A stretch of 64,000 bases of DNA from Octopus sinensis (GCF_006345805.1 NC_043022.1:6324001-6388000); one strand, 5' to 3'. Positions 21,248 to 63,965 are shown, counted from the first letter of the stretch. Program-made: numbers and translations. Notes: generated by a model not told the origin, from the letters alone.

Positions 21248-21312
<65 letters not shown>

Positions 21313-21715
21313 GGCGGAAAGCTGGCAGAAACGTTAGCACGCCGGGTGAAATGCGTAGCCGTATTTCGTCTGCTGTTACGTTCTGAGTTCAAATTCCACC
21401 GAGGTCGACTTTGCCTTTCATCCTTTCGGGGTCGATAAATTAAGTACCAATTACGCACTGGGGTCGATATAATCGATTTAATCCGTTTGTCTGTCATTGT
21501 TTGTCCCCTCTGTGTTTAGTCCCTTGTGGGTAGTAAAAAAAATAGGTATTTCGTCTGTCTTAATCTTCTGAGTTCAAATTCCGCCGAGGTCGACTTTACT
21601 TTTTATCCCTTCGGGATCGATAATTTAAGTACCAGTCACGCACTGGGGTCGATGTAAACGAATTACCTCCTCCCCACGAAATTGCTGGCCTCGTGTCAAA
21701 AAATTTGAAAGCGAT
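21122..21715 (+). mobile_element. (TTA/TCA)n array followed by a type B/type A SINE dimer
   Basis: One head, a B tail, junction AAATAGGTATTTCG, then a more diverged A body and tail. Confidence 0.85.
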
Positions 21716-22139
21716 ATTTAAAACAAATTTTGAGTGAAGTAAGGGGAGACTACTATTGTTAAGCGACAGGGGAGACTACTTGATTAAGAAGTTGGTGCGA
21801 AAGGTTATTAGTAAAAAGGAGAAGAGGTCGTAGGTTTTATTTAAACACTAAAGAAGTGTTTCTTGGCGCCGGGTTTGCTCTGATTGAACAGACCTATAAA
21901 CAAGGACGTTACAGCCGTGACACTCTTGTTTTTCTTGTCAGTATGTCCAATGTGTCCTTAATTTGAAAGAGATTTGGGTTATTTTTAACTACGTAGAAGG
22001 ACTACGTTGAAAGCCCCGCCACGGGTTCGATGAAAGAACTTTGTTATTAGCTGTGATGACTTAAGGGAGTTGGCGAGGTTGGAGGGGCGCTGGGGGGGAC
22101 TAATGATGTTGCAGGGAGTGAGGAGACGATATCCCATGA

Positions 22140-22425
22140 CAGCTCCCATGACTTCAGGAAACATTTTTTCACGCTGAGAGTTGCTGAAGCATGGAACAAA
22201 CTGCCGGCATCGGAGCACTGCATCCTTCAAAACTTCCATGCTTCCTGAAATTCGCCAACACTACACCTGATTTTCTCCCCTCCATACACACGCAAACATG
22301 TATCTGACTCATACATTGTTCGCTTTCCAGACATTTCTACATTACTGCATGTACTTTATATGCACTTTCTGACAAGTTGTGGTGCACCTGAGCACTGTAT
22401 ACAATAATTTCATTATTATTATTTA
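22140..22425 (+). mobile_element. CR1/L2-type LINE 3' end
   Basis: RKHFFTLRVAEAWNKLP motif followed by a 3' UTR and (ATT)n tail; inverted copy at 44270-44590. Confidence 0.75.
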
Positions 22426-22739
22426 TCCCGAATGGGCTGGGAACTGTGGCTTATGACGATACTCGGACAATTAAGGGTGGAATTTGAAGAACCTAGAATC
22501 TGGTCGGTAATGCTCCATTGTCAGTGTGTAGCGGTATGTATGTATATGTATGTATGAACGTATATATGAATGCATACACACGCTCGTGCACAAGTACACA
22601 CGCACATACTCGGCGGAATTTTGATAGCTAATGATATATGTTGCAATCCTTCGGTATTGGTATCTCTCCTCGTGACATGGATAAAGACACTCTGGAGACC
22701 AATACCGAAGAAATTCCCAATAAGGGTTTCTAGGTAAAG

Positions 22740-23430
22740 AAAATGAAGAATTTAGTAAGATGTGCTCCTGGATTCCGAGACCTTTCTGGTCTAGATGCTC
22801 ACACCATCATCCTTCTCTACTCCACTTTTGCCCGACCCCACCTTGAATACTGTTGCCCCTTATGATCTTCCCACACGAAGCAAAGCATTATAAAAGTGGA
22901 AGTACTCCAGAAGTCAATAACAAGAAAGATAGACGGCATTAACAAAAGAAAAACTGAATCTCTACTCTCTCCAACGTCGCCATGAGCGCTACATCATTTG
23001 TCTGATATGGAAAATATTCCATCAATATTGCACAAATGATGCTGGTATCAATTTTAAAATCCACCCAAGACTTGGCCTCCCGTGCTATCCGCCCACGACA
23101 AAAATCGAACTGAAGACACATATCCTTATGACTTAATTACTTAACCTCAACCGGTCCAGCTCTCTTTAATATCATACTGAAATACATTAAAACGGAAACA
23201 GATCCCATAAATTTCACAAGTTCTCTGGACAAATTCCTCCAAAAAATTCCGGACCAACCTCCTACATTCGGATGTGTCTCCAAAAATAAAGACTCTTTGC
23301 TCGAGTGGGCCATGATGTCCCGTACATGACTGAGGTGTGAATCACGATCTAAAAGACTCCACCAGGTGGTGCTTCTAAGTCAGACATGGCCTGGGCCTTT
23401 GCTGGCCGAAACCTAAAAGATCGAAGTTAT
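22740..23430 (+). mobile_element. CR1-type LINE reverse-transcriptase C-terminal fragment (decayed)
   Basis: LLYSTFARPHLEYC, EVLQKSITRKI and YSLQRRHERYIIC motifs. Confidence 0.7.
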
Positions 23431-23777
23431 ATATAAAAAAAAATAATACTTTGGCAATTCTTCGGTATTGGTAGACGACATCATTCCCCCACACAACCTT
23501 CTTCTCTCATGACATAGACAAAGAGGCCAGGCAGAAATAAAGGGTCAATTACATGATCTCTGAATGCTGAAACTCTGGAAACCAATACCGAAGGATCGTC
23601 ATAGATGTTATTACAAAATATTTCATTGAAAATAAATGAAACAGAATATGTATTTTAAGGTGTGTTGATATTCTATCACGATACGTAAATGTGTGTGTGT
23701 GTGTGTGGAGGGGGGCGTATAGTTGTTACAAATGTCTATCGACACTGAGACGAAAGAATAAAAGATAAAAGCTAACC

Positions 23778-24209
23778 GGTGATCTTTCGTCTCTAGTAGA
23801 CCTTTCCGTCGATTTCCGTAAATTTTTTTTTTTTTTTTACATATGGGCTTGCGGGAACTTTTGAAGTAATATACATACATATACACATACACCGAGTAAA
23901 AAATTTCAGTTATCTCTCTCTTTCACACATTACTCTGTCTCTTCACACACACTAACAGAAGCACTTCACTTACACAACATACTGTCTGTCTCCCACACTC
24001 CATCAAACACACACACACGCACACACACACATGTACATCAATGCTTGCCATGCACGGTAACTTCAAAAGAATTTCCCTCGTCATATAATCGCTTTCTCTT
24101 AGTCTCTTTCGCTCTCATTACTTCAAAAGTTCCCGCAAGCCCATATGTAAAAAAAAAAATTTTTTTTACGGAAATCGACGTAAAGGTCTACTAGAGACGA
24201 AAGATTGCC
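23778..24209. mobile_element. Merlin-like MITE, 432 bp, with about 95-bp TIRs
   Basis: Termini GG(T/C)(G/A)ATCTTTCG; 8-bp TSD AGCTAACC at 23770-23777 and 24210-24217. Confidence 0.75.
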
Positions 24210-24484: not shown

Positions 24485-24517
24485 ATACATATGTGTTTGT
24501 GTGTGTGAGTGTGTGTG

Positions 24518-24568
<51 letters not shown>

Positions 24569-26787: not shown

Positions 26788-28583
26788 TGAGGTGGTATCA
26801 AAGGGTTCCCCGACTAGTTGTGTGGCGTGCCAACAGATGGCAGCACATGGTTGCGTGTACAGTGAGAGCTAGCAGTGACCTCTATGGGGCAGTGTGTCAA
26901 GTGACATTGCTGGGTTTACTTCACAAGTTGTAAAATTTGTGATTTTGTGATGTGGTGTCTGCTGTAGTCTGCAATTTTTGTCATGGACAGGAAGTTGGAA
27001 CAAAGAGCCAACATGGAACTTTGTGTTAAACTTAGGAAGTCTGCTGCAGAGACATTGAGCATGCTTTGGCAAGATTACGGCGATGAAGCAATGGGTCGTA
27101 TGCAATGTTTCGAGGGGCACGGGTGCTTCAAAAGTGGAAAAATGTCCCTGGAAGATGATGAGCGATTTGGAAGACATGTCACGAGTGTCAGCCCCGGAAA
27201 TGGGGAGGAAATTTATCAGCTTGTGCATGAGGATCGTCCAAGGACAACCGTTGACATTGCTGATGTTGTTCGTCTGTCTTATAGGTCCATGCAGGCAATC
27301 CTAACGCCTGAATACGCAGCATGTCTACCAGTTTTGTCCCCCGACTTGCTGACCCCTGAGTAGAAAGAATATCATGTTCAAGTTTGTCAAGATCTCTGCT
27401 GATGCTGATGACCCCTTCTTCAAGTTGAGGATCATCACCGGTGACGAGAGTTGGGTCTACTGGTACGACTCTGAAATTTAAGGCGGTGAGCTGGCAGAAA
27501 CGTTAGCACGCCGGGCGAAATGCGTAGCCGTATTCCATCAGCCGTTATGTTCTGAGTTCAAATTCCGCCGAGGTCAACTTTGCCTTTCATCCTTTTGGGG
27601 TCGATAAGTTAAGTACCAGTTACGCACTGGGGTCGATGTAATCGACTTAATCTGTTTGTCTGTCCTTGTTTGTCCTCTCTGTGTTTAGCCCCTTGTGGGT
27701 AGTAAAGAAATAGGTATGACCCTGAAAAAGGCGGCGATCTGGCAGAAACGTTAGTACGCTGGGCGAAATGCTTAGCGGTATTTCGTCTGCGTTACGTTGT
27801 GAGTTCAAATTCCGCCGAGGTCGACTTAGCCTTTCATCCTTTCGGGGTCGATAAATTAAGTACCAGTTACGCACTGGGGTCGATGTAATCGACTTAATCC
27901 GTCTGTCTGTCCTTGTTTGTCCCCTCTGTGTTTAGCCCCTTGTAGGTAATAAAGAAATAGGTATGACCCTGAAATGAAGTCGCAGTTACTGCAATGGAAG
28001 AGGCCCTTATCCCCTTGACCAAAGAAGGAACAGAGTCACAGCTCAATCACGAGCATGCTCTTCGATTTTTGGGGGTTTGTTTTTTCGACATCTGAGGTAT
28101 TGTGCAGACAGTCAATCGAGGGTTCTACTTTGATGTTTCGAAGCGTTTGGGTGAGAACATTCGACGAAAGTGACCCCGATCTGTGGACCGTGAAGAATTG
28201 GATTCTTCATGACAACAATGCACCCTATCACCGGACTCTCCTCACTCGGAAATTTCTCGCCAAAATACATAGTATTGCTTCCGCACCAGCCCTATTCGCC
28301 AGATCTAGCACCTGCAGACTTCCATCTCTTTCCCAAAATGAAAATGCAACTCAAAGGTTGCCGGTTTAACACTATTGTCGAGATCCAGAACACATTGCAG
28401 AAGCACCTCGACTCACTTTTGGAAAGCAACTTCCAGGCCAGATTCCAAAAGTGGTGGGAACGCTGGGACCGGTGTATTGCTGTGCAAGGTGTGACAATTC
28501 CAAAGGAGATGATGTTATAACTTAGGTAAATAAGTAATTTTCCATTAAAATAACTAATCCTGGAACTTTTTCATATCACCTTG
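26788..28583 (+). mobile_element. Full-length decayed mariner (DD34D) transposon split by a SINE dimer
   Basis: Imperfect TIRs of about 31 bp flanked by TA (26786-26787, 28584-28585); transposase motifs EQRAN, DDERFGR, ITGDESWVYWYD, HDNNAPYH and PYSPDLAPADFHLF with frameshifts. Confidence 0.92.
27478..27960 (+). mobile_element. Two complete type B SINEs, each bounded by the same 15-bp target sequence
   Basis: GGTA(C/T)GAC(T/C)CTGAAA at 27462-27476, 27713-27727 and about 27960-27974. Confidence 0.88.
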
Positions 28584-28793
28584 TAAGAGGACAAGAGTTC
28601 AAATCTCACTAAGGCCAACCTTCTCTTTTATGCTTTTTGCGGTATTTCTTCTAATTCATTATATTCTGAATTCAGGTTTGCCTTTCGTCCCTGCAGGGGT
28701 CAATGAAATAAATTACCAGTTAAGTAATGGATTCAATGATAATGATGAAACGTCCCTCCTCTACTGCCCTTATGCCTCAATTAGAAATTATTA

Positions 28794-29620: not shown

Positions 29621-30027
29621 TCTTTTACTCATTTCAGTCCTTTGACTGTGACCCTGCTGGAGCTCTGCCTTGAAGGATTTTAGTCAAATCAACCAACATT
29701 TTTTAAAACTTGATACTTGTTCTAACAGTTTCTTTTGCCAAACTGCTAAGTTACAGAGACAAACATACCCACAGTGGTTGCCAAGTGGTGGTGGGACATT
29801 TCACACATACACACAAGTGCACGCACACACAGACGCAGGGCTTCTTTCAGTTTCCATCTACCAAATCTACTCACAAGGATTTGGTCAGCCCGAGGCTATA
29901 GCAGAAGACACTTGCACAAGGTGTCACATAGTGGGACTGAACCTGGAACCATGTGGTTGGGAAGCAAGCTTCTTACCACACACCCAAACTTGCCTTTAGT
30001 AACTATTATTATTATTATTATTATTAT

Positions 30028-30719
30028 TAAGGTAGCAAGCTGGCAGAGTTGTTAGCACACCAGACAAAATGCTTTGTAGCATTTCATCCGTCTTTATGTT
30101 TTTCTGAGTTCAAATTTCACCAAGGTCAATTTGCCTTTAATCCTTTTGGGGTCAATAAATTAAGTACCAGTGAAACACTGGGGTAAGGAAATTCACTAGT
30201 TCCCCGACCCCAAATTTCAGGCCTTATGCTTATAAAGGATTATCATTATTAAGAAAGGTGGCAAACTGGCAGGGTCATTTAGCACACCAGGTGAAATGCT
30301 TAGCGGCACTTTGCCAGTCGCTACATCCCGAGTTCAAATTCTGCCAAGGTCAACATTGCCTCTTAACCTTTTGGGGTCGATAAATTAAGTACCAGTGAAA
30401 CATTGGGGTCAGTGTAATTGACTAGACCCCTTCCCCACAATTTCAGGCCTTGTACCTTTAGTAGAAAGGATTATTATTATTATTATTAAGGTGCTGAGAT
30501 GGCAGAATTGTTAGCATGCCAGGCAAAATGTTTCGCAGCATTTTATCTGTTCTTAGGTTCTGAGTTCAAATTCTACCGAGGTCAACTTTGCCTTTTATCC
30601 TTTTGGGTTTGTTAGACTAAGTCCTTGCCGAGCACTGGGGTCAACGTCATCGACTTACCCCTTGGGCTTGTGCCAAGATCTGAAACCATTATTATTATTA
30701 TTATTATTATTATCATTAA

Positions 30720-36330: not shown

Positions 36331-36660
36331 TTTTCGATTCCCAGACCGGGCGTTGTGAGTGTTTATTGAGCGAAAACACCTAAAAGCTCCACGAGGCTCC
36401 AGCAGGGGATGGTGGTGATCCCTGCTGTACTCTTTCACCACAACTTTCTCTCACTCTTACTTCCTGTTTCTGTTGTACCTGTATTTCAAAGGGCCGGCCT
36501 TGTCACTCTCTGTGTCACGCTGAATATCCCCGAGAACTACGTTAAGGGTGCACGTGTCTGTGGAGTGCTCAGCCACTTACACGTTAATTTCACGAGCAGG
36601 CTGTTCCGTTGATTCGGATCAACCAGAACCCTCGTCGTCGTAACCGACGGAGTGCTTCCA
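36331..36660 (+). mobile_element. 5'-truncated copy of the 14452 SINE family with TSD
   Basis: TSD TATATTTATCC at 36320-36330 and 36661-36671. Confidence 0.88.
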
Positions 36661-37139
36661 TATATTTATCCCTCCTCATCACTTGACAAATGTTATATGT
36701 GTGTTTCTGTTCCTGTGACATAGCAGTTCAGCAAAATATTTATCAGGCTTAAAATAGAGAATAAGGACTGAGGTTAATTCATTCGACTAAAATTTTTCAA
36801 GGTGCTGCTCCAGCATGGCCGTACTCCAATGACTGAAAACAAGTAAAAGAAAAAAAAAGGTAAAGATATGAAGGAGGAGGTTTAATCTTGTCTAAACTGT
36901 AGAATATGGATGAGATGGTCAAGCGGAAGAAGAGAGAGAGGTGGATGGTGGTAAGTGCCAGGGCATCCCCTTGAGGTAGAGAGGTGATGATATAAATGGC
37001 AGGGCATTGCCAAAAAAGCGTGAGTAGAAGGGGAGGGGAATGCCGTGAGTGGTGAAAACCTGGGTCTATAGAGAGGTGGGGCAACCGGATAGCAATGATA
37101 CAATGAATACGGGGCCACGAAGACAGGATTGGGGAGTGA

Positions 37140-37640
37140 GTGAGTGTTCCACTGGTACTTAATTTATCTACCCCAAAAGGATGAATGGTAAAGTCAACCT
37201 TGGCAGGAGTTGAACTCAGAACAAAGACCGATGAAATACCTATTTCGTTATTACCCACAAGGGGCTAAACATAGAGAGGACAAACAAGGACAGACATAGG
37301 TATTAAGTCGAGTACATCGACCCCAGTGTGTAACTGGTACTTAATTTGTCGACCCCGAAAGGATGAAAGGCAAAGTCGACCTTGGCAGGATTTGAACTCA
37401 GAACAAAGACAGGTGAAATACCTATTTCTTTATTACCCACAAGGGGCTAAACATAGAGAGGACAAACAAGGACAGACATAGGTATTAAGTCGAGTACATC
37501 GACCCCAGTGTGTAACTGGTACTTAATTTATCGACCCCGAAAGGATGAAAGGCAAAGTTGACCTTGGCAGGATTTGAACTCAGAACAAAGACAGGTGAAA
37601 TACCTTTAAGTAATGCTAATGATTCTACCAAGTCACCATC
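37140..37640 (-). mobile_element. SINE array: old type A host carrying two type B bodies
   Basis: All three units share a private variant CCTTGGCAGGA(T/G)TTGAACTCAGAACAAAGAC..TGAAATACC. Confidence 0.85.
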
Positions 37641-40900: not shown

Positions 40901-41040
40901 GGTGGTGGCAGTGGTGGCGGTGGTGGCAGTGGTGGAAGTGGTGGCAGTGGTGGCGGTGGTGGCAGTGGTGGCGGTGGCGGTGGTGGCAGTGGTGGAAGTG
41001 GTGGCAGTGGTGGCGGTGGTGGCGGTGGTGGCGGTGGTGA
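37918..41040. repeat. 3.1-kb triplet-based minisatellite, basic unit GGTGGCAGT, with higher-order blocks
   Basis: Built from GGT/GGC/AGT with recurrent GGTGTCGGTGATGTTAGT, GGATGC and GGAAGT variants; long blocks recur near 38090, 39130 and 39530. Confidence 0.95.
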
Positions 41041-42419: not shown

Positions 42420-42830
42420 TGAAGGCAGCGAGCTGGCAGAAATGTTAGCACGCCGGGCGAAATGCTTAGCAGTATTTCGTCTGCCGTTACGTTCTGAGTT
42501 CAAATTCCACCAAGGTCGACTTTGCCTTTCATCCTATCGGGGTCGAATAAATAAGTACCAGTTACGCACTGGGGCCAATGTAATCGACTTGATCCGTTTG
42601 TCCGTCCTTGTTTGTCCCCTCTGTGTTTAGCCCCTTGTGGGTAGTAAAGAAATAGGTATTTCATCCTGCTACATTCTGAGTTCAAATTCCGCCAGGTCAA
42701 CTTTTCCTTTCATCCTTTCGGGATCGATAAATTAAGTACCAGTTGCGTACTGGGGTCGATGTAATTGACTAGTCCCCTCCCGCAAAACTTCAGGCTTTGT
42801 GCCTAGAGTAGAAATGATTATTATCATTAT
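42420..42830 (+). mobile_element. Type B/type A SINE dimer
   Basis: Single head, B tail, AAATAGGTATTTC junction, terminal older A unit. Confidence 0.85.
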
Positions 42831-46666: not shown

Positions 46667-47805
46667 ACTATATATAATGAAGGGGTAAATGATATAGTCA
46701 TCTACTTGATGCTGTTCAACCAATTAGCCCTCAAAATGGAACTTCAGGAATATAAAATTAAGGAGAGAAGCAAATTTCAGAGATCGGTGTATATATTCAT
46801 TCAGTCCATTTCAAATTATCGAAATTCTCCACAGTATGTATAGATGCGTTCACATACATGAACCACGATAACAATTTATAAGAATTTATAAATATATAAA
46901 CATACGAAGATTTATAAATACACAAAAATTCATAAAAAACTGCAAGGGGAATGTCAATTAAATACTAAAGTATGTAGTCCTACCTATCGATTACATTTCA
47001 ATTGTTCGCTTTGCGTATTAAATGAAAGACTTTGAAAATTAAAGGTGTCTATTTACTTCCCGCATGTCTGTGTGTGTATATATCTACATACAGAGAGAGA
47101 GACCGACAGACAGACAGATTGTTAACGATATTTCTGCACAATTCTGGGACTTCTGCTGTTATTCACAGATGCAGACACCCTTGACTTCATTATAATATTG
47201 ATTTCATATTTTGACACAAGGCCAGCAATTTCGGAGTACTTATTTTTATCGACCCCGAAAGGATAAAAAGCAAAGTCGACCTCAGAGGAATTTGAACTCA
47301 GAACGTAACGGCAGACGAAATACCTATTTCTTTACTACCCACAAAGGGCTAAACACAGACAGGACAAACAAGGACAGACAAACGGATTAAGTCGATTATA
47401 TCGACCCCAGTGCGTAACTGGTATTTAATCGACCTCGAAAGGATGAAAGGCAAAGTCGACTTCGGCGGAATTTGAACGCAGAACGTAAAGACAGACGAAA
47501 TACCGCTAGGCATTTGGTCCGGCGTGCTAAACGATTCTGCCAGTTCACGACCTTGAGACCACAATTGGGGCAGAGCGCACGCACGCACACACGCACGCAC
47601 ACATACATGCACACAGATACACACAAACACACACACTCACACACACAAACACACACACACACAGATTATACCTGGACTAAGAATGGAATTGGTTTACGGA
47701 TGCTTTCTTTTTCTTTGCGAGAGTGAGGAGTGTGGCGTGGGGTGTGTTTGTCTTTTCGTTCTTTCTTCCTTTCTTTCTTTACCGTTATCAAAATTTATTT
47801 TTCAG

Positions 47806-48741: not shown

Positions 48742-50030
48742 CGAGGGGCGTTCAATAAGTAATGTCCCTGACCCACTTCCCATAGCAGTAGAGCAACGAA
48801 ACTTGGCACAGTTATTAGTCTTTTTCTACATAGGAACCACCCAGAGTTACGCATTTCTCCCATTGTTTGATGCAGCTCTGGAGACCGTTTTTGTAGAAGA
48901 CCCCCAGCTTGGTCCTCCAACCACGACGTGACTTCAGAAATCAAGGCTGCATCATCTGGGAAACGCTTTCCTTTCAAAAACAACTTCATGCCTGGGAAGA
49001 GGTGAAAATCAGAGGGTGCAAGGTCAGGAAAGTAGGGGGATGGGGGAGGAGTTCATAGCCATACGCCTGTGCCTCTGATCTGGCGACAAGCGAGTTGTGG
49101 ACCGGAGCGTTGTCCTGCAGGAGGAGGATGCCTTTGCTGATCTTGCCCCGCCTCTTGATTTTGATAACTTCTCTTAATTTCCTCAAAAGTGAAGCATAAT
49201 AGGCTCCTGCAATTGTGGTACCCTTTGCCAGAAAATCTGTCATCACTACTCCGTCCTGGTCCCAGAAGACTGTGAGCATGACCTTGCCAGCGGAGGGCTG
49301 CACCCTTACCTTCTTTGGAGGGGGTGAGTCACGGTGCTTCCACTGCATTGACTGGGCTTTGATCTCTGGATCATCGTGATGGACCCAGGTTCATCCTGTG
49401 TAATCAGTCTTTTGAAAAATTTTGACTCATCTTCTTGGCACATCTCAAATTCACCCTCGAGCACTCGACGCGTTCTTGCTTCTGGAAAGGCGTGAGCAAC
49501 CTGGGAATCCATCTGGCAGACACCTTTTGCATATGCAAATGGTCATGAATGATAGTTTCCACAGACCCGGTACTAATTTTGACCTCATGGGCTATTTGGC
49601 GAATAATTATGCGTCGATCTTCCAAAATGGCAGCCTCAACTTGACGGACAGATCCATCATCAATGGCAGAAGGGGCGACCAGATCTGGGAGCTGTTTCCA
49701 CAGAGTTCTGATCATGTTTGAATTCACGATGCCAGCGTTTTACAAGGTCATATGATGGGGCATCATCACCATAAGTTACTTTCATTTCATCAAAAGTCTC
49801 CCGTGGTGTGCGTCCTTTCAAATACAAAAACAGGATCACTGCTCGACACTCAACAGGCTCCATTTCACACTTGACTCGGTTCAAACACCTGTAAATCAGA
49901 AACCACAATTAATTCAGAGCTGTAATTTGCCACTTACTCTATAGAGATATAAATGATTGCACATGCAAAATTTCAGCTAGATCAAACAACTGCAAGTGGG
50001 TCAGAGGCATTACTTATTGAACGTCCCTCG
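48742..50030 (-). mobile_element. Full-length (1289 bp) mariner DD34D transposon with frameshifted transposase, antisense in the last intron of gene 2
   Basis: TIRs CGAGGG(G/A)CGTTCAATAAGTAATG flanked by TA; HTH region, WIPRLL, ITQDE, LQDNAPVH and Y(F)PDLAPSDFHLFP motifs. Confidence 0.95.
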
Positions 50031-53559: not shown

Positions 53560-54050
53560 TCTTCATGGATTGATTATAAAAAAGCCTTTGACAGCATACC
53601 GCATTCGTGGATTCAGAAATCGCTGGACATTTTCAAAATTTCTCCTGTGATTTCAGATTTTTTAAAGTATAATATATCACTATGGAACACGAAGTTCCAA
53701 TTATATCATTCTAATTGAGTATTGTGCTCAAACAACATTAGCATAAACTGTGGAATTTTCCAAGGTGACTCACTTTCACCACTAATTTTCTGCATAGCAC
53801 TAATACCGCTCTCAAGTGAACTGAATAGAACAGGATATGGCTACAAAATTGACAATAGGAAAATAAGCCATCTATTTTATATGGATGATTTAAAGCTATA
53901 TGGCAAAGATGATGAAGAGCTTGAAGGATTATTACATACCGTGAAAGGATTCAGTGATGATATCGGGATGGAGTTTGGCCTTGAAAAGTGTGCCAAAGCC
54001 ACTTTTAAGAAAGGGAAATTGGTAAAGTCAAAATATGCACTCTCAAAATA
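53560..54050 (+). mobile_element. R4/Dong-type reverse transcriptase fragment
   Basis: DYKKAFDSIPHSWI, GIFQGDSLSPLIFC, HLFYMDDLKLY and GMEFGLEKCA motifs. Confidence 0.9.
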
Positions 54051-54364
54051 ATTATTCACTCTTAGTTTTCCGTTTTTCCCTATAAACAAAACAAAAATAT
54101 CCCATACGTATGATACGACCTTTATATAAATTGCATATATCTTCCACGTAAATAAGCGTGAATATTTCATGGAATAGCACTTATGCGCATGCGTTAGGCG
54201 ATGGGTGTTATAAAAATGAGTTCAATTAAAAGAAAATACACTTTTCCCAATCCAACGATTGGGAAATTGATTATTAGAAACTAAACCCGATGCATTGAAA
54301 GGTGTTATTTCCATGGAACGAAGAAGATGTAGGGGAGAGTGTGACTAATGGCCATAACGAAAGG

Positions 54365-54870
54365 CACTTATTTGATCGACCCCGAAAGAATGAAAGGCAA
54401 AGTCGACCTTGGCGGAATTTGAACTCAGAACGTAGCGGCAGACGAAATACCTATTTCTTTACTACCCACAAGGGGCTAAACACAGAGGGGGCAAACAATG
54501 ACGGACAAACGGATTAAGTCGATTATATCGACCCCAGTGCGTAACTGGTACTTATTTAATCGACCCCGAAATGATGAAAGGCAAAGTCGACCTCAGCGGA
54601 ATTTGAACTCAGAACGTAGCGGCAGACGAAATACCTATTTCTTTACTACCCACAAGGGGCTAAACACAGAGAGGACAAACAATGACGGACAAACGGATTA
54701 AGTCGATTATATCGACCCCAGTGCGTAACTGGTACTTATTTAATCAACCCCGAAAGGATGAAAGGCAAAGTCAACCTCGGCGGAATTTGAACTCAGAACG
54801 TAACGGCAGACGAAATACCGCTAAGCACTTCGCCCAGCGTGCTAACGTTTCTGCCAGCTCGCCACCTTAA
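54365..54870 (-). mobile_element. Type B SINE trimer array
   Basis: One head plus repeated 184-bp units joined at AAATAGGTATTTCG. Confidence 0.88.
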
Positions 54871-55762: not shown

Positions 55763-56170
55763 TATTTCTTTATTACCCACAAGGGGCTAAACATAGAGGG
55801 GACAAACAAGGACAGACATAGGTATTAAGTTGATTACATCGACCCCAGTGCGTAACTGGTACTTAATTTATCGACCCCGAAAGGATGAAAGGCAAAGTCA
55901 ACCTCGGCGGAATTCGAACTCACAACGTAACGACAAGCGAAATACCCATTTCTTTATTACCCACAAGGGGCTAAACATAGAAGGGACAAACAAGGACAGA
56001 CATAGGTATTAAGTCGATTACATCGACCCCAGTGCGTAACTGGTACTTAATTTATCGACCCCGAAAGGATGAAAGGTAAAGTCGACCTCGGCGGAATTTG
56101 AACTCACAACGTAACGCAGACGAAGTACCGCTAAGCATTTCGCCCGGCGTGCTACCGTTTCAGCCAGCTT
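55763..56170 (-). mobile_element. Type B SINE dimer array
   Basis: Internal junction at GGTATTTCG; the outer 3' flank begins GGTAC. Confidence 0.85.
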
Positions 56171-56724
56171 GCCAATCGATTATTATGCGTCGACGAGGAA
56201 TGACTGGAAGGTGAAGTAGGAATTGTAATCGATGGCCAAAAAGAGAAAAAAAGGAAGGTAGAAAGAGAAAAGAAATGGACCCAAACAAAATTTTACCCAG
56301 GAACTGGAAACTGGGAATATTTACTTTAAAAGATCCGACAGGAATGTTGATACAGTTTCTGGAATTTCCTGGTTGTTGAGTCGAGCGGACGATTAACCAT
56401 AACTTTGATCTCTCTATTGCCCAAGACCCACCAACCAACTGCAGAAATTTCAAAAAGCATTCACCAATAAACAGCGCTGGATTAACCGTTGAGCTAAATA
56501 AGCACGTGTTTAGGGCATCAAGGGAAGGGGGAAGGGCATCACAGAAATAGTAAATGGCTTACAGCACAAAAGAAATCACTTTAAATTTGCTAAATTACTC
56601 AAATCAGGCGAACAAACATTTGTATTTCTATCCAAAATGTAAATAATGGGAACCTAATTCAGTTGGGATACAAATATAGGGCTCTGAAGTAAACTGGATT
56701 TCTAATCTTTTCTACTCTAGGCAC

Positions 56725-57275
56725 AAGGCCTCAAACTTGGGGGAAGGGATTAAGTCAATCACATCGACCCCAGTGCATAACTGGTACTTATTTTATCGAC
56801 CCCGAAACGATGAAAGGCGGAATTTGAACTCAGAACGTAACGGCAGCCGAAATACCTATTTCTTTACTACCCACAAGGGGCTAAACGCAGAAGGGACAAA
56901 CACGGACAGACAAACGGATTAAGTCAATTACATCGACCCCAGTGCGTAATTGGTACTTATTTAATCGGCACCGAAAGAATGAAAGGCAAAGTCGACCTTG
57001 GCGGAATTTGAACTCAGAACGTAGCGGCAGAAGAAATACCTATTTCTTTACTACCCACAAGGGGCTAAACACAGAGAGGACAAACAAGGACAGACAAACG
57101 GATTAAGTCAATTATATCGACCCCAGTGCATAACTGGTACTTATTTAATCGACCCCGAAAGGATGAAAGGCAAAGTCGACCTCGGCGGAATTTGAACTCA
57201 GAACGTAACGGCAGACGAAATACCGCTAAGCACTTCGCCCGGCGTGCTAACGTTTCTGCCAGCTCGCCGCCTTAA
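56725..57275 (-). mobile_element. SINE array: two type B units ending in an older type A unit
   Basis: Same architecture as the 21311, 42420 and 63390 arrays. Confidence 0.85.
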
Positions 57276-58166
57276 ACTGAATTTCTAATACCCTATAAAT
57301 TGCCAGCATTCTAAAATAAGCCATAATTCTCTTATGCGCATACAATTACTTATATGTAAGTGTTATTCTTCTTGTTTGAGACATAAAATGTTGGATAACC
57401 TCATCGTACAACGAACCACTTTGTTATTAGTTTTGAAAACAAATTGAGATCGAAGTTATTGGATGATATTGGAAGAAAAAAGTTACTGTGAAACAAATTG
57501 GTTTTACTTTGTGAATCTTGAATTGATTTAAACGTACGACTTCTCGGCACGAAAACGAACATGCGACCGTGCTTGTCAAAGCTGTCGCACACCCTTTGCC
57601 AGTAATTCTTTGCCATTCATCCATTATCCTACGATTCACGCGGTACCATATTATGATACAATGCGCTGTGAGTTGTGAAGTGTTATTTGAGGACTCCCAA
57701 TGCCAGCAAATTTCAAGCAGAGGTATAATGAATTTGCCATTTTCGATGGGTGAGCAGCACACACCTAGCACACCCGGAGTATCCACCCATGAGTCTCTTG
57801 TACAGTTGTACAAATGCCTCCCAAACTGTGAACAAAGCTTAACCGAAGTTCCTCATGGACTCTCGCCCCGATGTGGCCAGCTGTAGCAACAACGTAATAT
57901 TAACGAGGGATTGGTTGTCTTGTTAGATTAATGTTGAGTTAAATCCTTCTGCATGGAAAAAGTTGACTTCGAAAGACTGGGTCCCTAGCCAGGAGAAGAT
58001 TTCTCTCTCATCAACTTAATGCCTCGGAAACCACCAAATAAACAAGCAACAATCCATCAGCAACTAAACGGCACTTGGACATCTTTTGCAAAATGGCACA
58101 AAAAATTCTGAGGTTTTGGCTTTTACTGTTTCATAATCATCATCGTCATTATTATTTTTATTATTA

Positions 58167-58630
58167 AGGCGACGAGCTTGGCAGAATGGTTAGCACATCG
58201 GGCGAAATGCTTAGTGCTATTTCGTCTGTCGCTACGTTCTGAGTTCAAATTCTGGCCAGGTTGACTTTGCTTTTCGTCCTTTCGGGGTCGATGAAATAAG
58301 TACCTATTTCTTTACTACCCACAAGGGGCTAAACACAGAGGGGACAAACAAGGACAGACAAACGGATTAAGTCGATTATATCGACCCCAGTGCGTAACTG
58401 GTACTTATTTAATCGACCCCGAAAGGATGAAAGGCAAAGTCGACCTCGGCGGAATTTGAACTCAGAACGTAGCGGCAGACGAAATGCCGCTAAGCACTTC
58501 TCCCGGCCCACTAACGATTCTGCCAGCCCCTCGCCGCCTTACGATGAAATAAGTAGCATTGAAACCCTGGGGTCGATATAGTCGACTAGCTCCCTCCCTC
58601 CCTCCCTCCCCCAAATTTCAGCCCTTGTGC
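58167..58630. mobile_element. Type B SINE (minus, 58305-58541) inserted antisense into a type A SINE (plus)
   Basis: 16-bp TSD CGATGAAATAAGTA(C/G)C at 58289-58304 and 58542-58557; the target reads GGTAC on the minus strand. Confidence 0.88.
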
Positions 58631-59203: not shown

Positions 59204-60534
59204 AAGGGTAAAGACCCCCTTCGGTCATGAATGACCATGGGATTGCACCTAGAAAGTTACCCTCCTAGACACAAGTCCAGGCAAGGTTGTTTATGGAAGA
59301 CCAGCAGTCGCCCATGCATACCAGCCTCCCCTCTCCACGCCACCAGTGTTATCCAAGGGAAAGACAAAGGTCGATACAGCCTGGCACCAGTGACGTCGCA
59401 ACTCATTTCTACAGCTGAGTGAACTGGAGCAACGTGAAATAAAGTGCCTTGCTCAAGAACTCAACACATATATATATATATTAAGCATGTATATATTGTC
59501 GTGACGAATCCATACTTCCGCTGTTAATGTCTCGAATTAATTTATAAATGTTTTACTATGTTGCTAAGAATCTCACTTTAAAACCAGGAAGTGGCGTAGC
59601 TAGAGTGTGTGCGACTAACAAAGTAGACACGAAAGTGCCTCCCGCATTGAAGTGCCACCTGGGACTGATAGTCTCTATTGCCCCTGCACCGTTACCTACG
59701 CTCTTGCAACCACATGGTTGTAGGTTCAAGCCTACGATACGGCATCTTTGACAAATGTCTTCGGCCGTATCCTCAGATTGGCCAAAACCTTGCAACGAAA
59801 ATCTGGTAAACGGAAACGATGTGGAAACCCATCAGAGCAGACCTTTCCCTTTGTTTATGTGTGATTGGCGTTAACCTGGTTTAACACCACCACCCTGTCT
59901 TTGTATATCTTTATTGGAGTCCACTCAATGGCTGGTCTTCAAACCAGGTCCCTTATTTAAAGACACTTACCCCATACATACGGCAACACTCGAAGACCTG
60001 GCATTGGGTTTCCACCTTTTGAATGTTCTTTGTTTCTAAACTATACTGATTGGGTTTTTGTTTTTCATTTTCCTGTGACACACACACACACACTGATTTC
60101 ACTAAGTGATACTAATAACCGGATGTTCAATATCCATATGCTTCAGGAAGAAGCGTCAGTTGAGAACAGAACGGTAATAAGGAACTCGAATGACAAAAGA
60201 GTAAACAATTCTGTTATGTACATCATTAGCTGACAGCTGTTTCTGCTATGAGAAGCAATGCACTCGTAGTTGGATACTTGAGTATTGCTCCAGTGCTTCA
60301 TCAGAGCTTCAAACACGAAGTGCATTTTTGGGAAAGCATTTACACACACACACAAGCATTAACCAGCAAAAAAGCATAACATATGTAGAAAATGCCGACA
60401 CAAATTTCATGTTACCATTCTGTTCTCGACCGACGCTTCGTTCCGAAGCAAACGTACATTGACTTCTGACCAGGTTATTAACAGCACAATTCCCACGCAA
60501 AACATTAATGTATGTATATATATATATATATATA

Positions 60535-60928
60535 GGCGCAGGACTGGCTGTGTGGTAAGTAGCTTGTTTACCAGCCACATGGTTCCGGGTTCAGTCCCAC
60601 TGCGTGGCACCTTGGGCAAGTGTCTTCTACTATAGCCTCGGGCCGACCAAAGCCTTGTGAGTGGATTTGGTAGACGGAAACTGAAAGAAGCCTGTCGTAT
60701 GTATGTATATATATATATATATGTGTGTTTGTGTGTCTGTGTTTGTCCCCCTAGCATTACTTGACAACCGATGCTGGTATGTTTATGTCCCCGTAACTTA
60801 GCGGTTCGGTAAAAGAGACCGATAGAATAAGTACTGGGCTTACAAAAGAATAAGTCCCGGGGTCGAGTTGCTCGATTAAAGGCGGTGCTCCAGCATGACC
60901 GCAGTCAAATGACTGAAAAGAGTAAAGA

Positions 60929-60930
<2 letters not shown>
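60535..60930 (+). mobile_element. Full-length CORE-type SINE
   Basis: Near-identical to 10048-10470. Confidence 0.92.
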
Positions 60931-60973
<43 letters not shown>

Positions 60974-61154
60974 TACATCAGCTCTGAGCTGAAACTAGAG
61001 AGAAAGATATACACATACACACACACATTTAATATTTCGCTCATAGGTGGAAACCCAATCTTTTTCTGGGTACATGAAGTACATGACCTCAAAGTAGTTT
61101 ATATGGGTGGGGCGTGGTGGGATTGAATTGGCTGTCACTGTATTATCACTATTA

Positions 61155-61408
61155 TTGGGTTGGTGCATAATTATTGCGGCTTTTTTTCAACAAATTTTAT
61201 TCCACAAAAACAACAACATGTAACAAAAACATCTTGAAATGATTATTCCGGAGCATATTCACCATCTACTTCAATTGCTGCTTCCCATTTGCTTGGCAGA
61301 CGGTCAGACTGTCATTTAAAGATGTCTTTGTTAAATATTTTTATTGTTTTTGTTGAATAAAATTTGTTGGCAAAGAAAAAAAGCCACAATGATTATGCAC
61401 CAACCAAA
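61155..61408 (-). mobile_element. Internally deleted mariner (MITE), 254 bp
   Basis: TIRs TTGG(G/T)TTGGTGCATAAT(T/C)ATTG flanked by TA; retains transposase C-terminus RLPSKWEAAIEVDGEY. Confidence 0.85.
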
Positions 61409-61788
61409 TAGTTACTGTTGATGACCATCACGTCGAAAAGATGAAGCACAAGATGGATGAACCCTTGTAGTTTTGAACTCAATGTAAACGGCTACAATTA
61501 AACATCCTCAATGAGTGTGTGGTCCTGACGGGGTGCGGTTAATTGATAAGCTAGCAAGATTTAAGCTGTTTTAATTTGACATTTTGTCGTAACTTTTTGT
61601 AGTTTCCATTTGATTAATACCAGATTTAGCTTTATCTTATCTTGAGTGGATATAATTACTGTTTCATGGGGGCTTTAGCCCTTAATGATCCCAACGGTGA
61701 GTAGCCCAGACCTTACCTACCAAATGGATAAAATTTCAAAAGCCATTTTTTTTCTAAAAAAAAAATACCGTCAGAGATTTTAACTACC

Positions 61789-61998
61789 TATTTCTTTATT
61801 ACCCACAAGAGGCTAAACACAGAGGGGGACAAACAAGGACAGACATAGGTATTAAGTCGATTACATCGACCCCAGTGCGTAACTGGTACTTAATTTATCG
61901 ACCCCGAAAGGATGAAAGGCAAAGTCGACCTCGGCGGAATTTGAACTCACAACGTAACGCAGACGAAATACCGCTAAGCATTTCTGCCAGCTCGCCGC
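61789..61998 (-). mobile_element. Type B SINE with 17-bp TSD
   Basis: CAGAGATTTTAACTACC at 61772-61788 and 61999-62015; the target reads GGTAG on the minus strand. Confidence 0.9.
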
Positions 61999-62346
61999 CA
62001 GAGATTTTAACTACCGAGCACCCCTTTGCGTATTATGTCCCTGCTTTTTGGAAAGACCACACTAAGGATATCCCATCCTATTTTGTGTTCGCGTGTGTTG
62101 GAGGATTCTAGAAAATCTTGTCCCTAACTTTCGCATGCAAAAACAAGTGATAACAACACTCAAGTCTGATTGCACAAACTGATGATCAACGGCTTTCCAT
62201 CCATGAGCACTCCATCATATTTATCCGTGACTGCATTATCCAGCGTGACCTATTTTCAGTGGCAGATTGAGATTCGAGATTTGCTGCTATTCCTAGCAGG
62301 TCGAACGACCATACATAGGTTAGTTAGGGTTAGTTCGTATTGGCTA

Positions 62347-62732
62347 TGGAAGCACTCCGTCGGTTACGACGACGAGGGTTCCGGTTGATCCGAATCAACG
62401 GAACAGCCTGCTCGTGAAATTAACGTGTAAGTGGCTGAGCACTCCACAGACACGTGTACCCTTAACGTAGTTCTCGGGGATATTCAGCGTGACACAGAGA
62501 GTGACAAGGCCGGCCCCTTGAAATACAGGTACAACAGAAACAGGAAGTAAGAGTGAGAGAAAGTTGTGGTGAAAGAGTACAGCAGGGATCACCACCATTC
62601 CCTGCCGGAGCCTCGTGGAGCTTTTAGGTGTTTTCGCTCAATAAACACTCACAACGCCCGGTCTGGGAATCAAAACCACGATCCTATGACCGCGAGTCCG
62701 CTGCCCTAATCGCTGGGCCATTGCGCCTCCAC
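62347..62732 (-). mobile_element. Full-length copy of the 14452 SINE family
   Basis: About 95% similar to 14452-14840 by eye; possible TSD AGTTCGTATT (62332-62341, 62735-62744). Confidence 0.9.
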
Positions 62733-63389
62733 CAAGTTCGTATTAATAAATGTAGAAAGATAGTGAAAGGCCGACTTCCGACCTTCTGCGTTCAAATCCA
62801 GCTACAGTTGTCTTGGCTCTTTTTTCTTTTCTTTTTTTCTTTTTTTTTTCTTTTTTTTTTACCTTCCAGATTTCATTTAAAACGGGTCCAGGGCAGGTAG
62901 ACATGGTTTTACGCAAAGAAATACCCCGAAATGTTTGAATGGTCTGTGGGCTCGTGAAGGGTTAACACGTGGTTAACACAGCTAGTGATAACAACCACCA
63001 CATGTCACTCTAAGGAACTCGACCTTTTTTCCTACTCCAGGTACATGACCTCAAAGTAATTTTGGTGGCTAGGGCACGGTAGGATTGAATCGACTGTCAC
63101 TATATTATCACTGTTATTGGTTATTGTCGAAAAAATGGATGAACCCTTGTAGTTTTGAATTCGATGTAAAAGGCTAGAATTAAACATCGCAAGGTATTTA
63201 GACCCTCAATCCATTTCGCCAGTCCACCCGTGACCTAAATATTAATTCTTAATTTAGTCACAAGACAAAACTCCAATTTTGGTGGTGGGAACTTGCGGAT
63301 TATATCGGTTCAACTGTTTGCTTGGCAACATTAGCAGACTTGTTGGAGCATCGAACCAAAAAGAGTTTCAATGTTTAGTAAAGAAAAGA

Positions 63390-63965
63390 TAGCGAGCTGG
63401 CAGAACCGTTAGCATGCCGGGCGAAATGCTTAGCGGTATTTCGTCTGCCGCTACGTTCTGAGTTCAAATTTCGCCGAGGTCGACTTTGCCTTTCATCCTT
63501 TCGGGGTCGATTAAATAAGTACCAGTTACGCACTGGGGTCGATATAATCGACTTAATCCGTTTGTCTGTCCTTGTTTGTCCTCTCTGTGTTTAGCCCCTT
63601 GTGGGTAGTAAAGAAATAGGTATTTCTTCTGCCGCTACGTTCTGAGTTCAAATTCCGCCAAGGTCGACTTTGCCTTTCATTCTTTCGGTGCCGATTAAAT
63701 AAGTACCAATTACGCACTGGGGTCGATATAATCGACTTAATCCGTTTGTCTGTCCTTGTTTGTCCTCTCTGTGTTTAGCCCCTTGTGGGTAGTAAAGAAA
63801 TAGGTATTTCGGCTGCCGTTACGTTCTGAGTTCAAATTCCGCCGAGGTCGACTTTGCCTTTCATCTTTTCGAGAGTCGATAAAATAAGTACCAGTGACAT
63901 ACTGGGGTCGATGTAATTGACTTAACCCCCTACCCCAACTTGCTGGCCTTGTGGCAAAATTTGGA
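63390..63965 (+). mobile_element. SINE array: two type B units ending in an older type A unit
   Basis: Junctions AAAGAAATAGGTATTTC; terminal tail CTTGCTGGCCTTGTGGCAAAATTTG. Confidence 0.88.

What the first reader, a model, noticed from the sequence alone, without database searches (positions are those of the whole stretch)
21311..63965. Self-targeting SINE subfamily: GGT-specific insertion generates single-head tandem arrays
Seen: wherever a type B TSD can be read, the target begins GGT (GGTTT at 9016 and 18260, GGTAY at 27462, GGTAC at 58304 minus, GGTAG at 62015 minus; the 3' flank at 55762 is also GGTAC). The SINE body itself contains GGTATTTCG and GGTAC. At least eight arrays (21311, 37140, 42420, 47230, 54365, 55763, 56725, 63390) have one head and B units joined at AAATA/GGTATTTC, and most end in an older, more diverged type A unit. 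At 37140-37640 every unit repeats about 50 bp of the host's private variants. Inference: new B copies prime at GGT inside resident relatives and resolve their 5' end by homology, growing SINE satellites in place. This is a self-homing mode I do not know to be described for cephalopod SINEs. Two B copies (5075, 7575) do not show GGT.
Basis: partly seen in the sequence, partly recalled or inferred. Interest (0 to 1): 0.7.

Follow-up and report, generated by a model that had tools for sequence, protein, structure and literature searches.

The report
GGT-primed octopus SINE forms mobile multimers
A young SINE subfamily in this octopus-type DNA almost always inserts in front of the three bases GGT. 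The same GGT inside the SINE is where head-less 184-bp copies are joined into short arrays, but at least some of these arrays moved as ready-made composite elements rather than growing where they now sit.

Summary
The window has 22 type B 3' ends. Twelve are array junctions reading AAAT(A/G)|GGTATTTC. Seven of the nine independent non-array ends are followed by GGT (P = 6e-12). All five readable target-site duplications (TSDs) start GGT in the 3' copy, and four of five also in the 5' copy. GGT(A/T)-specific integration is therefore real. One site (27462) was hit twice by different B subtypes.

The idea that arrays grow in place by homing into older type A residents is only partly supported.
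- Arrays 56706-57273(-) and 63395-63969(+) are collinear copies of one three-unit composite. They share unit-specific variants, have unrelated flanks, have their own TSDs and carry different tail ends, so they were retrotransposed whole, with a tail swap.
- None of 10 free A heads has GGT at the junction site.
- Terminal "A" units resemble the B core more closely (88-94%) than any free A copy does (76-89%).
- Young A tails occur only at array ends.
- Only array 37.1-37.6 kb looks like an insertion into an old resident, here with a 47-nt duplicated host segment. Its second B unit is a local duplicate.

Best reading: junctions are made during retrotransposition by GGT/ACC priming, and the single-promoter multimers then spread as composite SINEs. 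This is a new variant of known kinds and of moderate interest. The sample is only 64 kb.

The parts
21311..21725 (+). Array A21311: B1-type head plus B unit (21311-21544), junction AAATA|GGTATTTC at 21545, terminal unit with A1-type tail. Preceded by 190 bp of (TATTAT)n.
37120..37640 (-). Array A37: old, deleted head; u1 37423-37604; u2 37241-37422 (3/166 differences from u1); old A-like terminal unit about 37120-37240. The first 47 nt of u1 and u2 are host-type and the rest is B2-type.
42422..42815 (+). Array A42422: head plus a B3-like unit, junction at 42655, terminal unit with A2-type tail (GTGCCTAGAGTAGAAATG) followed by (ATT)n. (ATT)n also lies 5' of the array.
47190..47543 (-). Array A47: A-like head, one B unit (47325-47504), terminal A1-tail unit with an internal deletion.
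54363..54868 (-). Array A54: head, u1 54636-54819, u2 54452-54635, u3 54363-54451 truncated at its 3' end. All units are B3-type. u3 shares variants with u2 of A56 and A63.
55763..56173 (-). Array A55: 5'-truncated head plus two B2 units (junction AAATG|GGTATTTC at 55946). It ends in a B tail followed by GGTAC. The units differ 9/184 from each other and 6-7/184 from dispersed copy S61787.
56690..57289 (-). Array A56 with its TSD: TSD ATTAGAAATYCAGTTTA at 57273-57289 and 56690-56706; head; u1 57041-57224; u2 56857-57040; u3 with A2-type tail end.
63371..63978 (+). Array A63 with its TSD: TSD ATGTTTAGT at 63371-63379 and 63970-63978; 11 extra nt; truncated head; u1 63435-63618; u2 63619-63802; u3 with A1-type tail end. 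Collinear with A56 (562 bp, 92%).
27462..27975 (+). Double hit of one GGT site inside a mariner-like ORF: TSD1, older B1 copy (27480-27712), TSD2, younger B2 copy (27728-27959), TSD3. TSD2 matches TSD3, and TSD1 differs at 2 nt.
18260..18512 (+). Dispersed B2 monomer flanked by the 10-nt TSD GGTTTCTTTG.
9016..9516 (+). Dispersed B monomer (9154-9388) flanked by a 128-bp TSD starting GGTTTAG, with 12 extra nt at the 5' junction.
58289..58557 (-). B3 monomer inserted in inverted orientation into an A-type SINE (58166-58585 +) at that SINE's GGTAC. An ordinary nested insertion with both heads kept and a 16-nt TSD.
61772..62015 (-). B2 monomer (head with an internal deletion) flanked by the 17-nt TSD GGTAGTTAAAATCTCTG.
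4869..5083 (+). 5'-truncated B1 monomer without GGT at its 3' junction (AAATG|CATATT).
7347..8130 (+). 392-bp tandem DNA duplication (99%) carrying a B copy without GGT (AAATA|TATAAC). Counted once.

Best explanation
Type B is a young subfamily (subtypes B1, B2, B3) of a tRNA-derived, CORE-type octopus SINE. It integrates by target-primed reverse transcription under a three-base rule. The bottom-strand primer ends ...(A/T)ACC-3', so the TSD starts GGT(A/T) directly after the element's ...GAAATA end.

The SINE carries the same motif at nt 49 (GC|GGTATTTCG), between its A-box and B-box regions. A DNA end finishing in ...ATACC-3' at that position is accepted as a primer on a B RNA 3' end. That end can be the nicked strand of a resident SINE, or the growing cDNA that has just copied nt 49. 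The result is an out-of-register join, AAATA|GGTATTTC, and a head-less 184-bp repeat.

Only the first unit keeps the head, so a multimer remains a single Pol III transcription unit. It is then retrotransposed whole as a composite SINE through whatever tail its last unit carries (B tail, or A1/A2 tails acquired by reverse-transcriptase template switching). Occasional local DNA duplication adds units.

Shown: the GGT rule, the invariant junction, transposition of one composite as a whole with tail exchange, one insertion into an old resident, and one local duplication.

Inferred: the priming chemistry, Pol III transcription of whole multimers, and the relative share of cDNA re-priming versus nicking of resident DNA.
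For: 1. GGT rule. Seven of nine independent non-array B ends are followed by GGT (P = 6e-12), as is one more copy in an Octopus sinensis contig. In four of five TSDs the GGT is also in the 5' copy, so it comes from the target. Site 27462 was used twice, by an older B1 copy and a younger B2 copy.

2. Systematic junction. All 12 of 12 junctions are AAAT(A/G)|GGTATTTC, across B1/A, B2 and B3 arrays. Both units of A55 carry all the B2 diagnostic sites and those of A54, A56 and A63 carry the B3 sites, so the junction arose more than once.

3. Units as old as dispersed copies. A55 u1/u2 differ 9/184, against 5-7/184 among dispersed B2 copies. The join was therefore made at or near insertion, not by recent crossing-over.

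4. Composite mobility. A56 and A63 are collinear over 562 bp. Identity is 180/184 for the u1 pair and 178/184 for the u2 pair, with u2-private variants shared and 0/105 core differences. The flanks are unrelated. The TSDs are 17 nt (16/17 matching) and 9 nt.

5. Template switching. The first ~65 aligned nt of u3 show no substitutions between A56 and A63 (apart from a 15-nt deletion in A56), including the private TTTCGGCTG. The rest is about 16% different and ends in A2 versus A1 tail ends.

6. Hosts. Zero of 10 free A heads have GGT at nt 49. Terminal A-tail units are 88-94% identical to the B core against 76-89% for free A copies. No free young A monomer is present.

7. Excess. There are 806 GGT[AT] sites in the window but only 8 head-context GGTATTTC, and yet 12 of 22 B ends sit on that motif.
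Against: - The sample is one 64-kb window plus 10.6 kb of O. sinensis. Composite transposition rests on one clear pair (A56/A63), with A54 as a looser relative.
- A37 shows that insertion into a resident does happen.
- Arrays A21311, A42422 and A47 are each unique here, so in-place formation cannot be excluded for them.
- Terminal units of A21311 and A47 share a T5 run and A42422 has a T4 run, which could stop Pol III before the tail.
- No partner LINE carrying the B tail was found, so it is unknown whether the rule comes from endonuclease specificity or from primer-template pairing.
- Nothing here separates re-priming on nascent cDNA from nicking of resident DNA for the first formation of a junction.
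Confidence: 0.5

Rival explanations
1. New B copies nick GGT inside resident SINEs. The staggered-cut overhang, or longer homology, pairs with the homologous part of the cDNA, so no second head is added. Arrays grow unit by unit where they sit.
For: - A37: the old host has GGT at the site. B2-type sequence is joined to 47 nt of host-type sequence that is repeated like a long TSD. A 128-bp TSD at 9016 shows that long staggered cuts occur.
- The one inverted-orientation hit in a SINE (58289-58557) is a normal two-head nested insertion, while all eight direct-orientation cases have a single head. That is what homology-assisted 5' joining predicts.
- The double hit at 27462 shows that a GGT next to a resident B copy can be re-used.
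Against: - A56 and A63 are copies of one composite at two loci with different tails.
- Zero of 10 free A heads offer GGT.
- Terminal units are not like free A copies.
- In A21311 and A42422 the head and the first nucleotides of u1 are B-type rather than host-type.
- The second unit of A37 is a duplicate of the first, sharing B-part private variants, not a new hit.
- Random GGT use predicts about 1-2% of hits at this site.
Confidence: 0.25
2. Pure DNA-level origin. Unequal crossing-over, or replication slippage between the internal GGTAT and a GGTAT in the 3' flank, makes and expands the arrays. Retrotransposition plays no part in the junction.
For: Local DNA duplications exist in the window: A37 u1/u2 (3/166), the 392-bp duplication at 7347-8130, and the 223-bp A-type array at 13596-14149. 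Many B flanks begin GGTA, which gives 4-5 nt of microhomology.
Against: - The identical junction recurs in at least three subfamily backgrounds.
- Units in A54, A55, A56 and A63 are no closer to array neighbours than to dispersed copies.
- The same composite sits at two loci, each with its own TSD.
Confidence: 0.08
3. GGT is simply the last three bases of the B element, homologous to the ...AAAGG end of the A2 tail. There is no target preference, and the arrays are unrelated to it.
For: The B tail aligns with the A2 tail so that B's terminal GG falls on A2's GG. Source copies would all be followed by GGT, so read-through RNA would carry it.
Against: Four of five TSDs have GGT in the 5' copy too, upstream of the head, where element sequence cannot be. 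Overlap of element end and target is the known microhomology situation, not an alternative to target choice.
Confidence: 0.04
4. Assembly artefact: arrays are mis-joined or collapsed reads of dispersed SINE copies.
For: The window contains an N gap at 383-482, and repeats are hard to assemble.
Against: Units within arrays carry distinct variants. Two arrays have matching TSDs across their whole length. The junction is identical in 12 cases in both orientations.
Confidence: 0.02

Closest known systems
3'-junction overlap and TSD-start rule of RTE/CR1/L2-related LINEs and SINEs (Nishiyama and Ohshima 2018, PMC6007223; Ichiyanagi and Okada 2008 as cited there)
   Same: The first nucleotides of the TSD are fixed and match the 3' end of the RNA template. 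This is explained by choice of cleavage site and/or base pairing of the nicked target with the RNA.
   Different: Here the rule is three specific bases (GGT, then A or T) rather than one or two. No T-stretch lies about 10 nt upstream in the five sites read. The tail is not a microsatellite. The same motif lies inside the SINE and is used as an internal junction.
SINE-derived satellites of squamates (Vassetzky et al. 2023, PMC10702118) and tandem-like SINE structures in bivalves and potato (PMC11481361)
   Same: Tandem units correspond to part of a SINE, starting inside or just after the head. Arrays of 2-3 units are the common case.
   Different: Those are attributed to unequal homologous recombination or repeated insertion at one locus. 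Here the junction is a single fixed point that coincides with the element's target motif, there are at most three units, and one array type is itself retrotransposed.
Target-site triplication of Alu (Lee et al. 2015, cited in PMC11481361)
   Same: At 27462-27975, two full elements share three copies of one TSD.
   Different: The two copies belong to different subtypes and have different ages. This points to two hits of a sequence-specific site rather than recombination between TSDs.
VNTR composite retrotransposons (SVA, LAVA; PMC4432496) and dimeric or complex SINEs
   Same: A non-autonomous element with an internal tandem-repeat domain of variable unit number is mobilised as one unit.
   Different: The repeat unit here is the SINE's own body plus tail (184 bp). 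The likely promoter is Pol III in a single head. The mechanism of unit gain appears tied to the integration rule.
Mosaic SINE evolution by reverse-transcriptase template switching (Kramerov and Vassetzky 2011; Akasaki 2010; discussed in PMC4758252)
   Same: A56 and A63 have one body with two different tail ends and a switch point inside the shared core.
   Different: Template switching usually exchanges modules in register. The array junction requires an out-of-register switch or priming at GGU/GGT.
Target-specific LINEs whose insertion recreates the target and builds head-to-tail arrays, for example Dong in (TAA)n (from my own knowledge, not tested here)
   Same: The type A copies here end in (ATT)n and stack head-to-tail through it (30011-30657). 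B recreates GGT at its 3' side.
   Different: B's internal-site arrays lack heads. No partner LINE was identified.

Membership tests
tRNA-derived SINE, CORE-SINE superfamily (octopus OR1/OR2 type) | Short non-coding dispersed repeat flanked by variable TSDs | tested here: met
   44 core matches in 64 kb. TSDs of 9-17 nt, and one of 128 nt.
tRNA-derived SINE, CORE-SINE superfamily (octopus OR1/OR2 type) | tRNA-related head with Pol III A and B boxes | tested here: inconclusive
   A B-box-like GAGTTCAAATTCC and an A-box-like TAGCACGCCGG can be read in the sequence. ARAGORN finds no tRNA and Rfam gives no tRNA match.
tRNA-derived SINE, CORE-SINE superfamily (octopus OR1/OR2 type) | Conserved CORE central domain | not tested
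   TTTCATCCTTTCGGGGTCGATAAATTAAGTACC resembles the MIR core as I recall it. OR1/OR2 are listed as CORE-SINEs (PMC4824008, PMC4758252). No reference sequence was available to align.
tRNA-derived SINE, CORE-SINE superfamily (octopus OR1/OR2 type) | 3' tail shared with a partner LINE | not testable with these tools
   All 22 tail matches in the window are attached to SINE bodies. The one RT fragment (53560-54050) has no such tail nearby. No octopus genome could be searched.
Sequence-specific TPRT (fixed TSD start) | The TSD begins with the same nucleotides in independent insertions | tested here: met
   5 of 5 TSDs start GGT in the 3' copy, and 7 of 9 non-array ends are followed by GGT, P = 6e-12.
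Sequence-specific TPRT (fixed TSD start) | The motif is present in the target before insertion | tested here: met
   GGT is in the 5' TSD copy in 4 of 5 cases (GCT in the fifth). No true empty alleles were available.
RTE-type insertion signature (Nishiyama and Ohshima 2018) | T-stretch about 10 nt upstream of the TSD start | tested here: not met
   The upstream 20 nt of the five sites read show no T run.
SINE-derived satellite | Tandem units derived from part of a SINE | tested here: met
   184-bp units spanning nt 49 to the B tail end.
SINE-derived satellite | Long homogenised arrays (at least 4 units) | tested here: not met
   The maximum is three units. Only A37 u1/u2 are locally homogenised.
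Composite SINE retrotransposed as a unit | The same multi-unit structure at two or more loci with unrelated flanks and a TSD around the whole | tested here: met
   A56 versus A63: 562 bp collinear with unit-specific shared variants, unrelated flanks, and TSDs of 17 and 9 nt.
Composite SINE retrotransposed as a unit | Many copies genome-wide; transcription of the whole unit | not testable with these tools
   No octopus genome or transcript data could be reached. There are no T4+ runs in A54, A55 or A56, but T4-T5 runs occur in four other arrays.
Target-site triplication | Two adjacent elements sharing three copies of one TSD | tested here: met
   27462, 27713 and 27960.

The most novel reading that the evidence does not exclude
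The B machinery accepts any DNA 3' end finishing in ...(A/T)ACC as a primer. A GGT inside the SINE therefore acts as a built-in re-priming site. Satellite-like SINE multimers would then be produced by the retrotransposition reaction itself (cDNA re-priming or self-nicking) and spread as single-promoter composite elements. That would be a programmed, RNA-mediated route from SINE to tandem repeat, rather than recombination.
Probability: 0.3. Interest if true: 0.65.

Novelty: new variant of a known kind. Interest (0 to 1): 0.45.

Why it matters
SINEs make up about 12% of the Octopus vulgaris genome (PMC13282606), and most of its recently active SINE families are unclassified. Three things follow if the reading is right.
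- A three-base integration rule gives a handle on which LINE drives the young subfamily and where new copies can land.
- If multimers are made during reverse transcription and then amplified as composites, this would be a clear case of tandem repeats seeded by retrotransposition chemistry rather than by recombination. That bears on how SINE-derived satellites start.
- For annotation, these arrays should be modelled as composite families. Scoring them as nested or fragmented SINE hits would distort copy counts and age estimates.

Tried and rejected
Attempts to enlarge the sample all failed.
- A protein search with a SINE-junction ORF gave one 543-bp ENA contig.
- A mariner query gave a single O. 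sinensis protein. Its 10.6-kb contig holds one B2 copy, again followed by GGT.
- An RT-fragment query gave hits at 70% identity or less. The one contig fetched has no SINE.
- Exact-pattern scans of JGI metagenome contigs (two) and viral contigs (one) gave 0 hits.
- Ten window ORFs are not in the protein collection.
So no genome-wide logo and no orthologous or polymorphic empty sites could be obtained.

Ideas considered and rejected or left open.
- Segmental duplication as the source of A56/A63: rejected, because similarity stops at the array ends.
- Simple nested insertion for the arrays: rejected, because no second head or internal TSD is present.
- tRNA or Rfam identification of the head: nothing found.
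- Reconstructing the empty site of A63 suggested an old degenerate SINE head as its target. The match is weak and the window ends 22 nt later, so this is left open.
- Subfamily homogeneity of arrays as evidence for same-RNA re-priming: only 2-3 independent arrays (my hand estimate from the subtype counts is P about 0.07), so it is too weak to use.

Full report
WHAT IS THERE

The window is AT-rich animal DNA dense in microsatellites. It contains 44 copies or units of one SINE core. The only outside sequence that shares the SINE is an Octopus sinensis contig, so this is octopus-type DNA.

All copies share a head of about 50 nt and a core of about 120 nt. They differ in the tail.
- Type B ends ...CCCTTGTGGGTA(G/A)TAAAGAAATA.
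- Type A ends in one of two related tails, A1 (...TTGCTGGCCTTGTGCCAAAATTTGAAACC...) or A2 (...CAGGCCTTGTGCCTTTAGTAGAAAGG), followed by (ATT)n.
- The B tail aligns with the A2 tail apart from an insertion of about 25 nt (read).
- B splits into subtypes B1, B2 and B3 by linked diagnostic sites.

I regard the element as a tRNA-derived CORE-type SINE like octopus OR1/OR2. The basis is box-like motifs and a resemblance to the CORE sequence recalled from memory, plus the listing of OR1/OR2 as CORE-SINEs. ARAGORN and Rfam give no formal support.

CHECK OF THE OBSERVATION

The B tail motif occurs 22 times against 0.01 expected.
- Twelve occurrences are internal junctions in eight arrays. Every one reads AAAT(A/G)|GGTATTTC.
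- Ten are terminal ends, nine of them independent. Seven of the nine are followed by GGT (P = 6e-12).
- The O. sinensis copy is also followed by GGT.
- Five TSDs can be read, of 10, 15-16, 16, 17 and 128 nt. All start GGT in the 3' copy and four also in the 5' copy. The GGT therefore belongs to the target, and the base after it is A or T.

At 27462 one site carries three TSD copies and two full B elements. The upstream element is B1 and more diverged (13/185 from its nearest relative). The downstream element is B2 and younger (5/184). TSD2 matches TSD3, while TSD1 differs at two bases. These are two independent hits, the second at the GGT recreated by the first.

WHAT THE ARRAYS ARE

The repeat unit is 184 bp, running from nt 49 of the SINE (GGTATTTCG) to the B tail end. 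Only the first unit has a head. Six arrays end in a unit with an A-type tail, one ends in a B tail followed by GGTAC (A55), and one is truncated (A54). Five lines of evidence bear on their origin.

1. Unit relationships
- Only A37 has units closest to each other (3/166).
- The two units of A55 differ 9/184 from each other and 6-7/184 from dispersed copy S61787.
- A54 units are as close to A56, A63 and S58303 as to each other.
- A56_u2 and A63_u2 are each other's nearest relative (0/105 in the core, 6/185 overall), and so are A56_u1 and A63_u1 (4/185).
- Pure local crossing-over is therefore not the rule. The joins are about as old as the dispersed copies.

2. A56 and A63 are one composite at two loci
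- They are collinear from head to tail (562 bp, 92%).
- Identity is 180/184 in u1 and 178/184 in u2.
- They share unit-private variants and their flanks are unrelated.
- Each has its own TSD: ATTAGAAATYCAGTTTA, and ATGTTTAGT.
- The first ~65 aligned nt of u3 show no substitutions between them (apart from a 15-nt deletion in A56), including the private TTTCGGCTG. The rest differs by about 16% and ends in A2 versus A1 tail ends.
- This is the footprint of a whole multimer being retrotransposed, with its 3' module exchanged by template switching. It cannot be two in-place growth histories.
- A54 is a looser relative. Its third unit carries variants of the u2 of the other two.

3. The supposed hosts do not fit
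- Zero of 10 free A heads have GGT at nt 49. They read GGCAT, GACAT, AGCAT or CAGTAT.
- In the whole window, GGTATTTC in head context occurs only in B2/B3-type or array heads.
- Terminal A-tail units all begin GGTATTTC. They are 88-94% identical to the B core, against 76-89% for free A copies.
- Their tails form sublineages not seen among free A copies: GTGTCAAAA plus TTTTTATCC in A21311 and A47, and CCTAGAGTAGAAA in A42422 and A56. Every young A-type tail in the window is therefore at the end of an array.
- If these were residents hit by B, essentially all susceptible residents would have been hit. If composites are the transposing form, this pattern is expected.

4. Quantity
- The window has 806 GGT[AT] sites and 8 head-context GGTATTTC sites.
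- Random use of GGT would place only 1-2% of B ends at that site, not 12 of 22.
- This needs extra homing specificity, or formation inside the retrotransposition complex, or amplification after formation.

- It has an old head with a deletion and an old A-like terminal unit.
- Its two units have a host-type first 47 nt and a B2-type remainder.
- This is what standard TPRT predicts if the bottom strand is nicked before the host's GGT and the top strand is cut 47 nt downstream. The top-strand overhang is then homologous to the cDNA, pairs with it and primes second-strand synthesis. The head of the incoming copy is never incorporated, and the 47 nt become a TSD.
- The 128-bp TSD at 9016 shows that such long staggers occur.
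- The second unit shares private variants in the B part with the first, so it is a later local duplication and not a second hit.
- The single inverted-orientation hit in a SINE (58289-58557) is an ordinary two-head nested insertion. This fits, because no homology-assisted joining is possible in that orientation.

MECHANISM

Shown:
- B integrates in front of GGT(A/T).
- The array junction is that same motif inside the SINE.
- Composites move as units and swap tails.
- Insertion into a resident and local duplication both occur.

Inferred:
- TPRT is primed from a bottom-strand end ...(A/T)ACC-3'.
- A cDNA that has just copied nt 49-57 of a SINE RNA ends ...CGAAATACC-3'. It therefore mimics a target primer and could re-initiate on the 3' end of a B RNA.
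- A nick before GGT in resident SINE DNA gives the same junction.
- The A-box region is only in the head and each unit keeps a B-box-like motif, so a multimer has one promoter and can be transcribed and copied whole. A54, A55 and A56 contain no T4+ run. Four arrays have T4-T5 runs in their terminal units. This is a weakness, although the T5 shared by A21311 and A47 shows that elements carrying it did transpose.

My estimates:
- GGT rule: 0.9.
- Junction made during retrotransposition rather than by recombination: 0.75.
- Most arrays seen here arriving as composites: 0.55.
- cDNA re-priming versus resident nicking for first formation: undecided.

COMPARISON WITH KNOWN SYSTEMS
[quoted passage not shown] Here the rule is longer (3 nt), and the RTE T-stretch signature is absent.
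- SINE-derived tandem repeats are known in squamates, bivalves and potato, and are attributed to unequal recombination or repeated insertion.
- Target-site triplication is known for Alu.
- Composite elements with internal VNTRs (SVA, LAVA) move as units.
- SINE modules are exchanged by template switching.
- New here is the coincidence of the integration motif with a single internal junction point, together with the evidence that the resulting multimers are themselves mobile.
- I found no paper in the held library describing this for octopus SINEs.

VERDICT
The GGT rule and its link to the junction hold. In-place growth on old type A residents does not hold as a general explanation.
- This is a new variant of known kinds, of moderate interest, and it rests on a small sample.

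Noticed in passing
10632-10826: A palindromic, MITE-like element of about 190 bp. Its inverted termini carry telomere-type repeats: (CCCTAA)n at 10638-10677 and (TTAGGG)n at 10774-10814, with outer inverted ends ACAACATCCTGTAAC.
   Followed up: partly
37919-41039: A 3.1-kb (GTGGTGGCA)n minisatellite with GC 0.68 and strong GC skew, directly beside array A37.
   Followed up: no
30011-30657 and 13596-14149: Type A SINE copies stacked head-to-tail with their heads kept. One stack has three diverged copies joined by (ATT)n. The other is a 223-bp-period array at 97% identity. A-type insertion seems aimed at (ATT)n, and the TSD of A56 starts ATT.
   Followed up: partly
26983-28600 (+) and 48986-49348 (-): Remnants of mariner-like transposase genes. 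The first has an HTH_48 match and frameshifts, and is broken by the two B copies. The second matches Transposase_1 at E = 8e-22.
   Followed up: partly
53560-54050 (+): A LINE reverse-transcriptase fragment with a YMDD motif and a stop codon. Its closest database proteins are only about 70% identical. No SINE-like tail was seen next to it.
   Followed up: partly
63380-63394: Eleven extra nucleotides (AAAGAAAAGAT) lie between the TSD and the truncated head of array A63. Together with the TSD's TAGT they match the B tail (TAGTAAAGAAA). This may be a short template jump onto another SINE RNA tail.
   Followed up: partly
63240-63379 plus 63979-64000: The reconstructed empty site of A63 weakly resembles an old SINE head, with the insertion close to the nt 49 region. 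The window ends too soon to confirm this.
   Followed up: partly
383-482: A run of 100 N (assembly gap) inside an (AT)n tract.
   Followed up: no
6150-6560, 10047-10447, 60532-60929; and 14455-14840, 36332-36661, 62346-62732: Two further dispersed repeat families of about 400 bp (91-98% identity between copies), not classified.
   Followed up: no
5418-5600 and 12299-12480: Two old A-like SINE cores have identical tails and identical downstream sequence. They appear to be part of a larger repeated segment.
   Followed up: no
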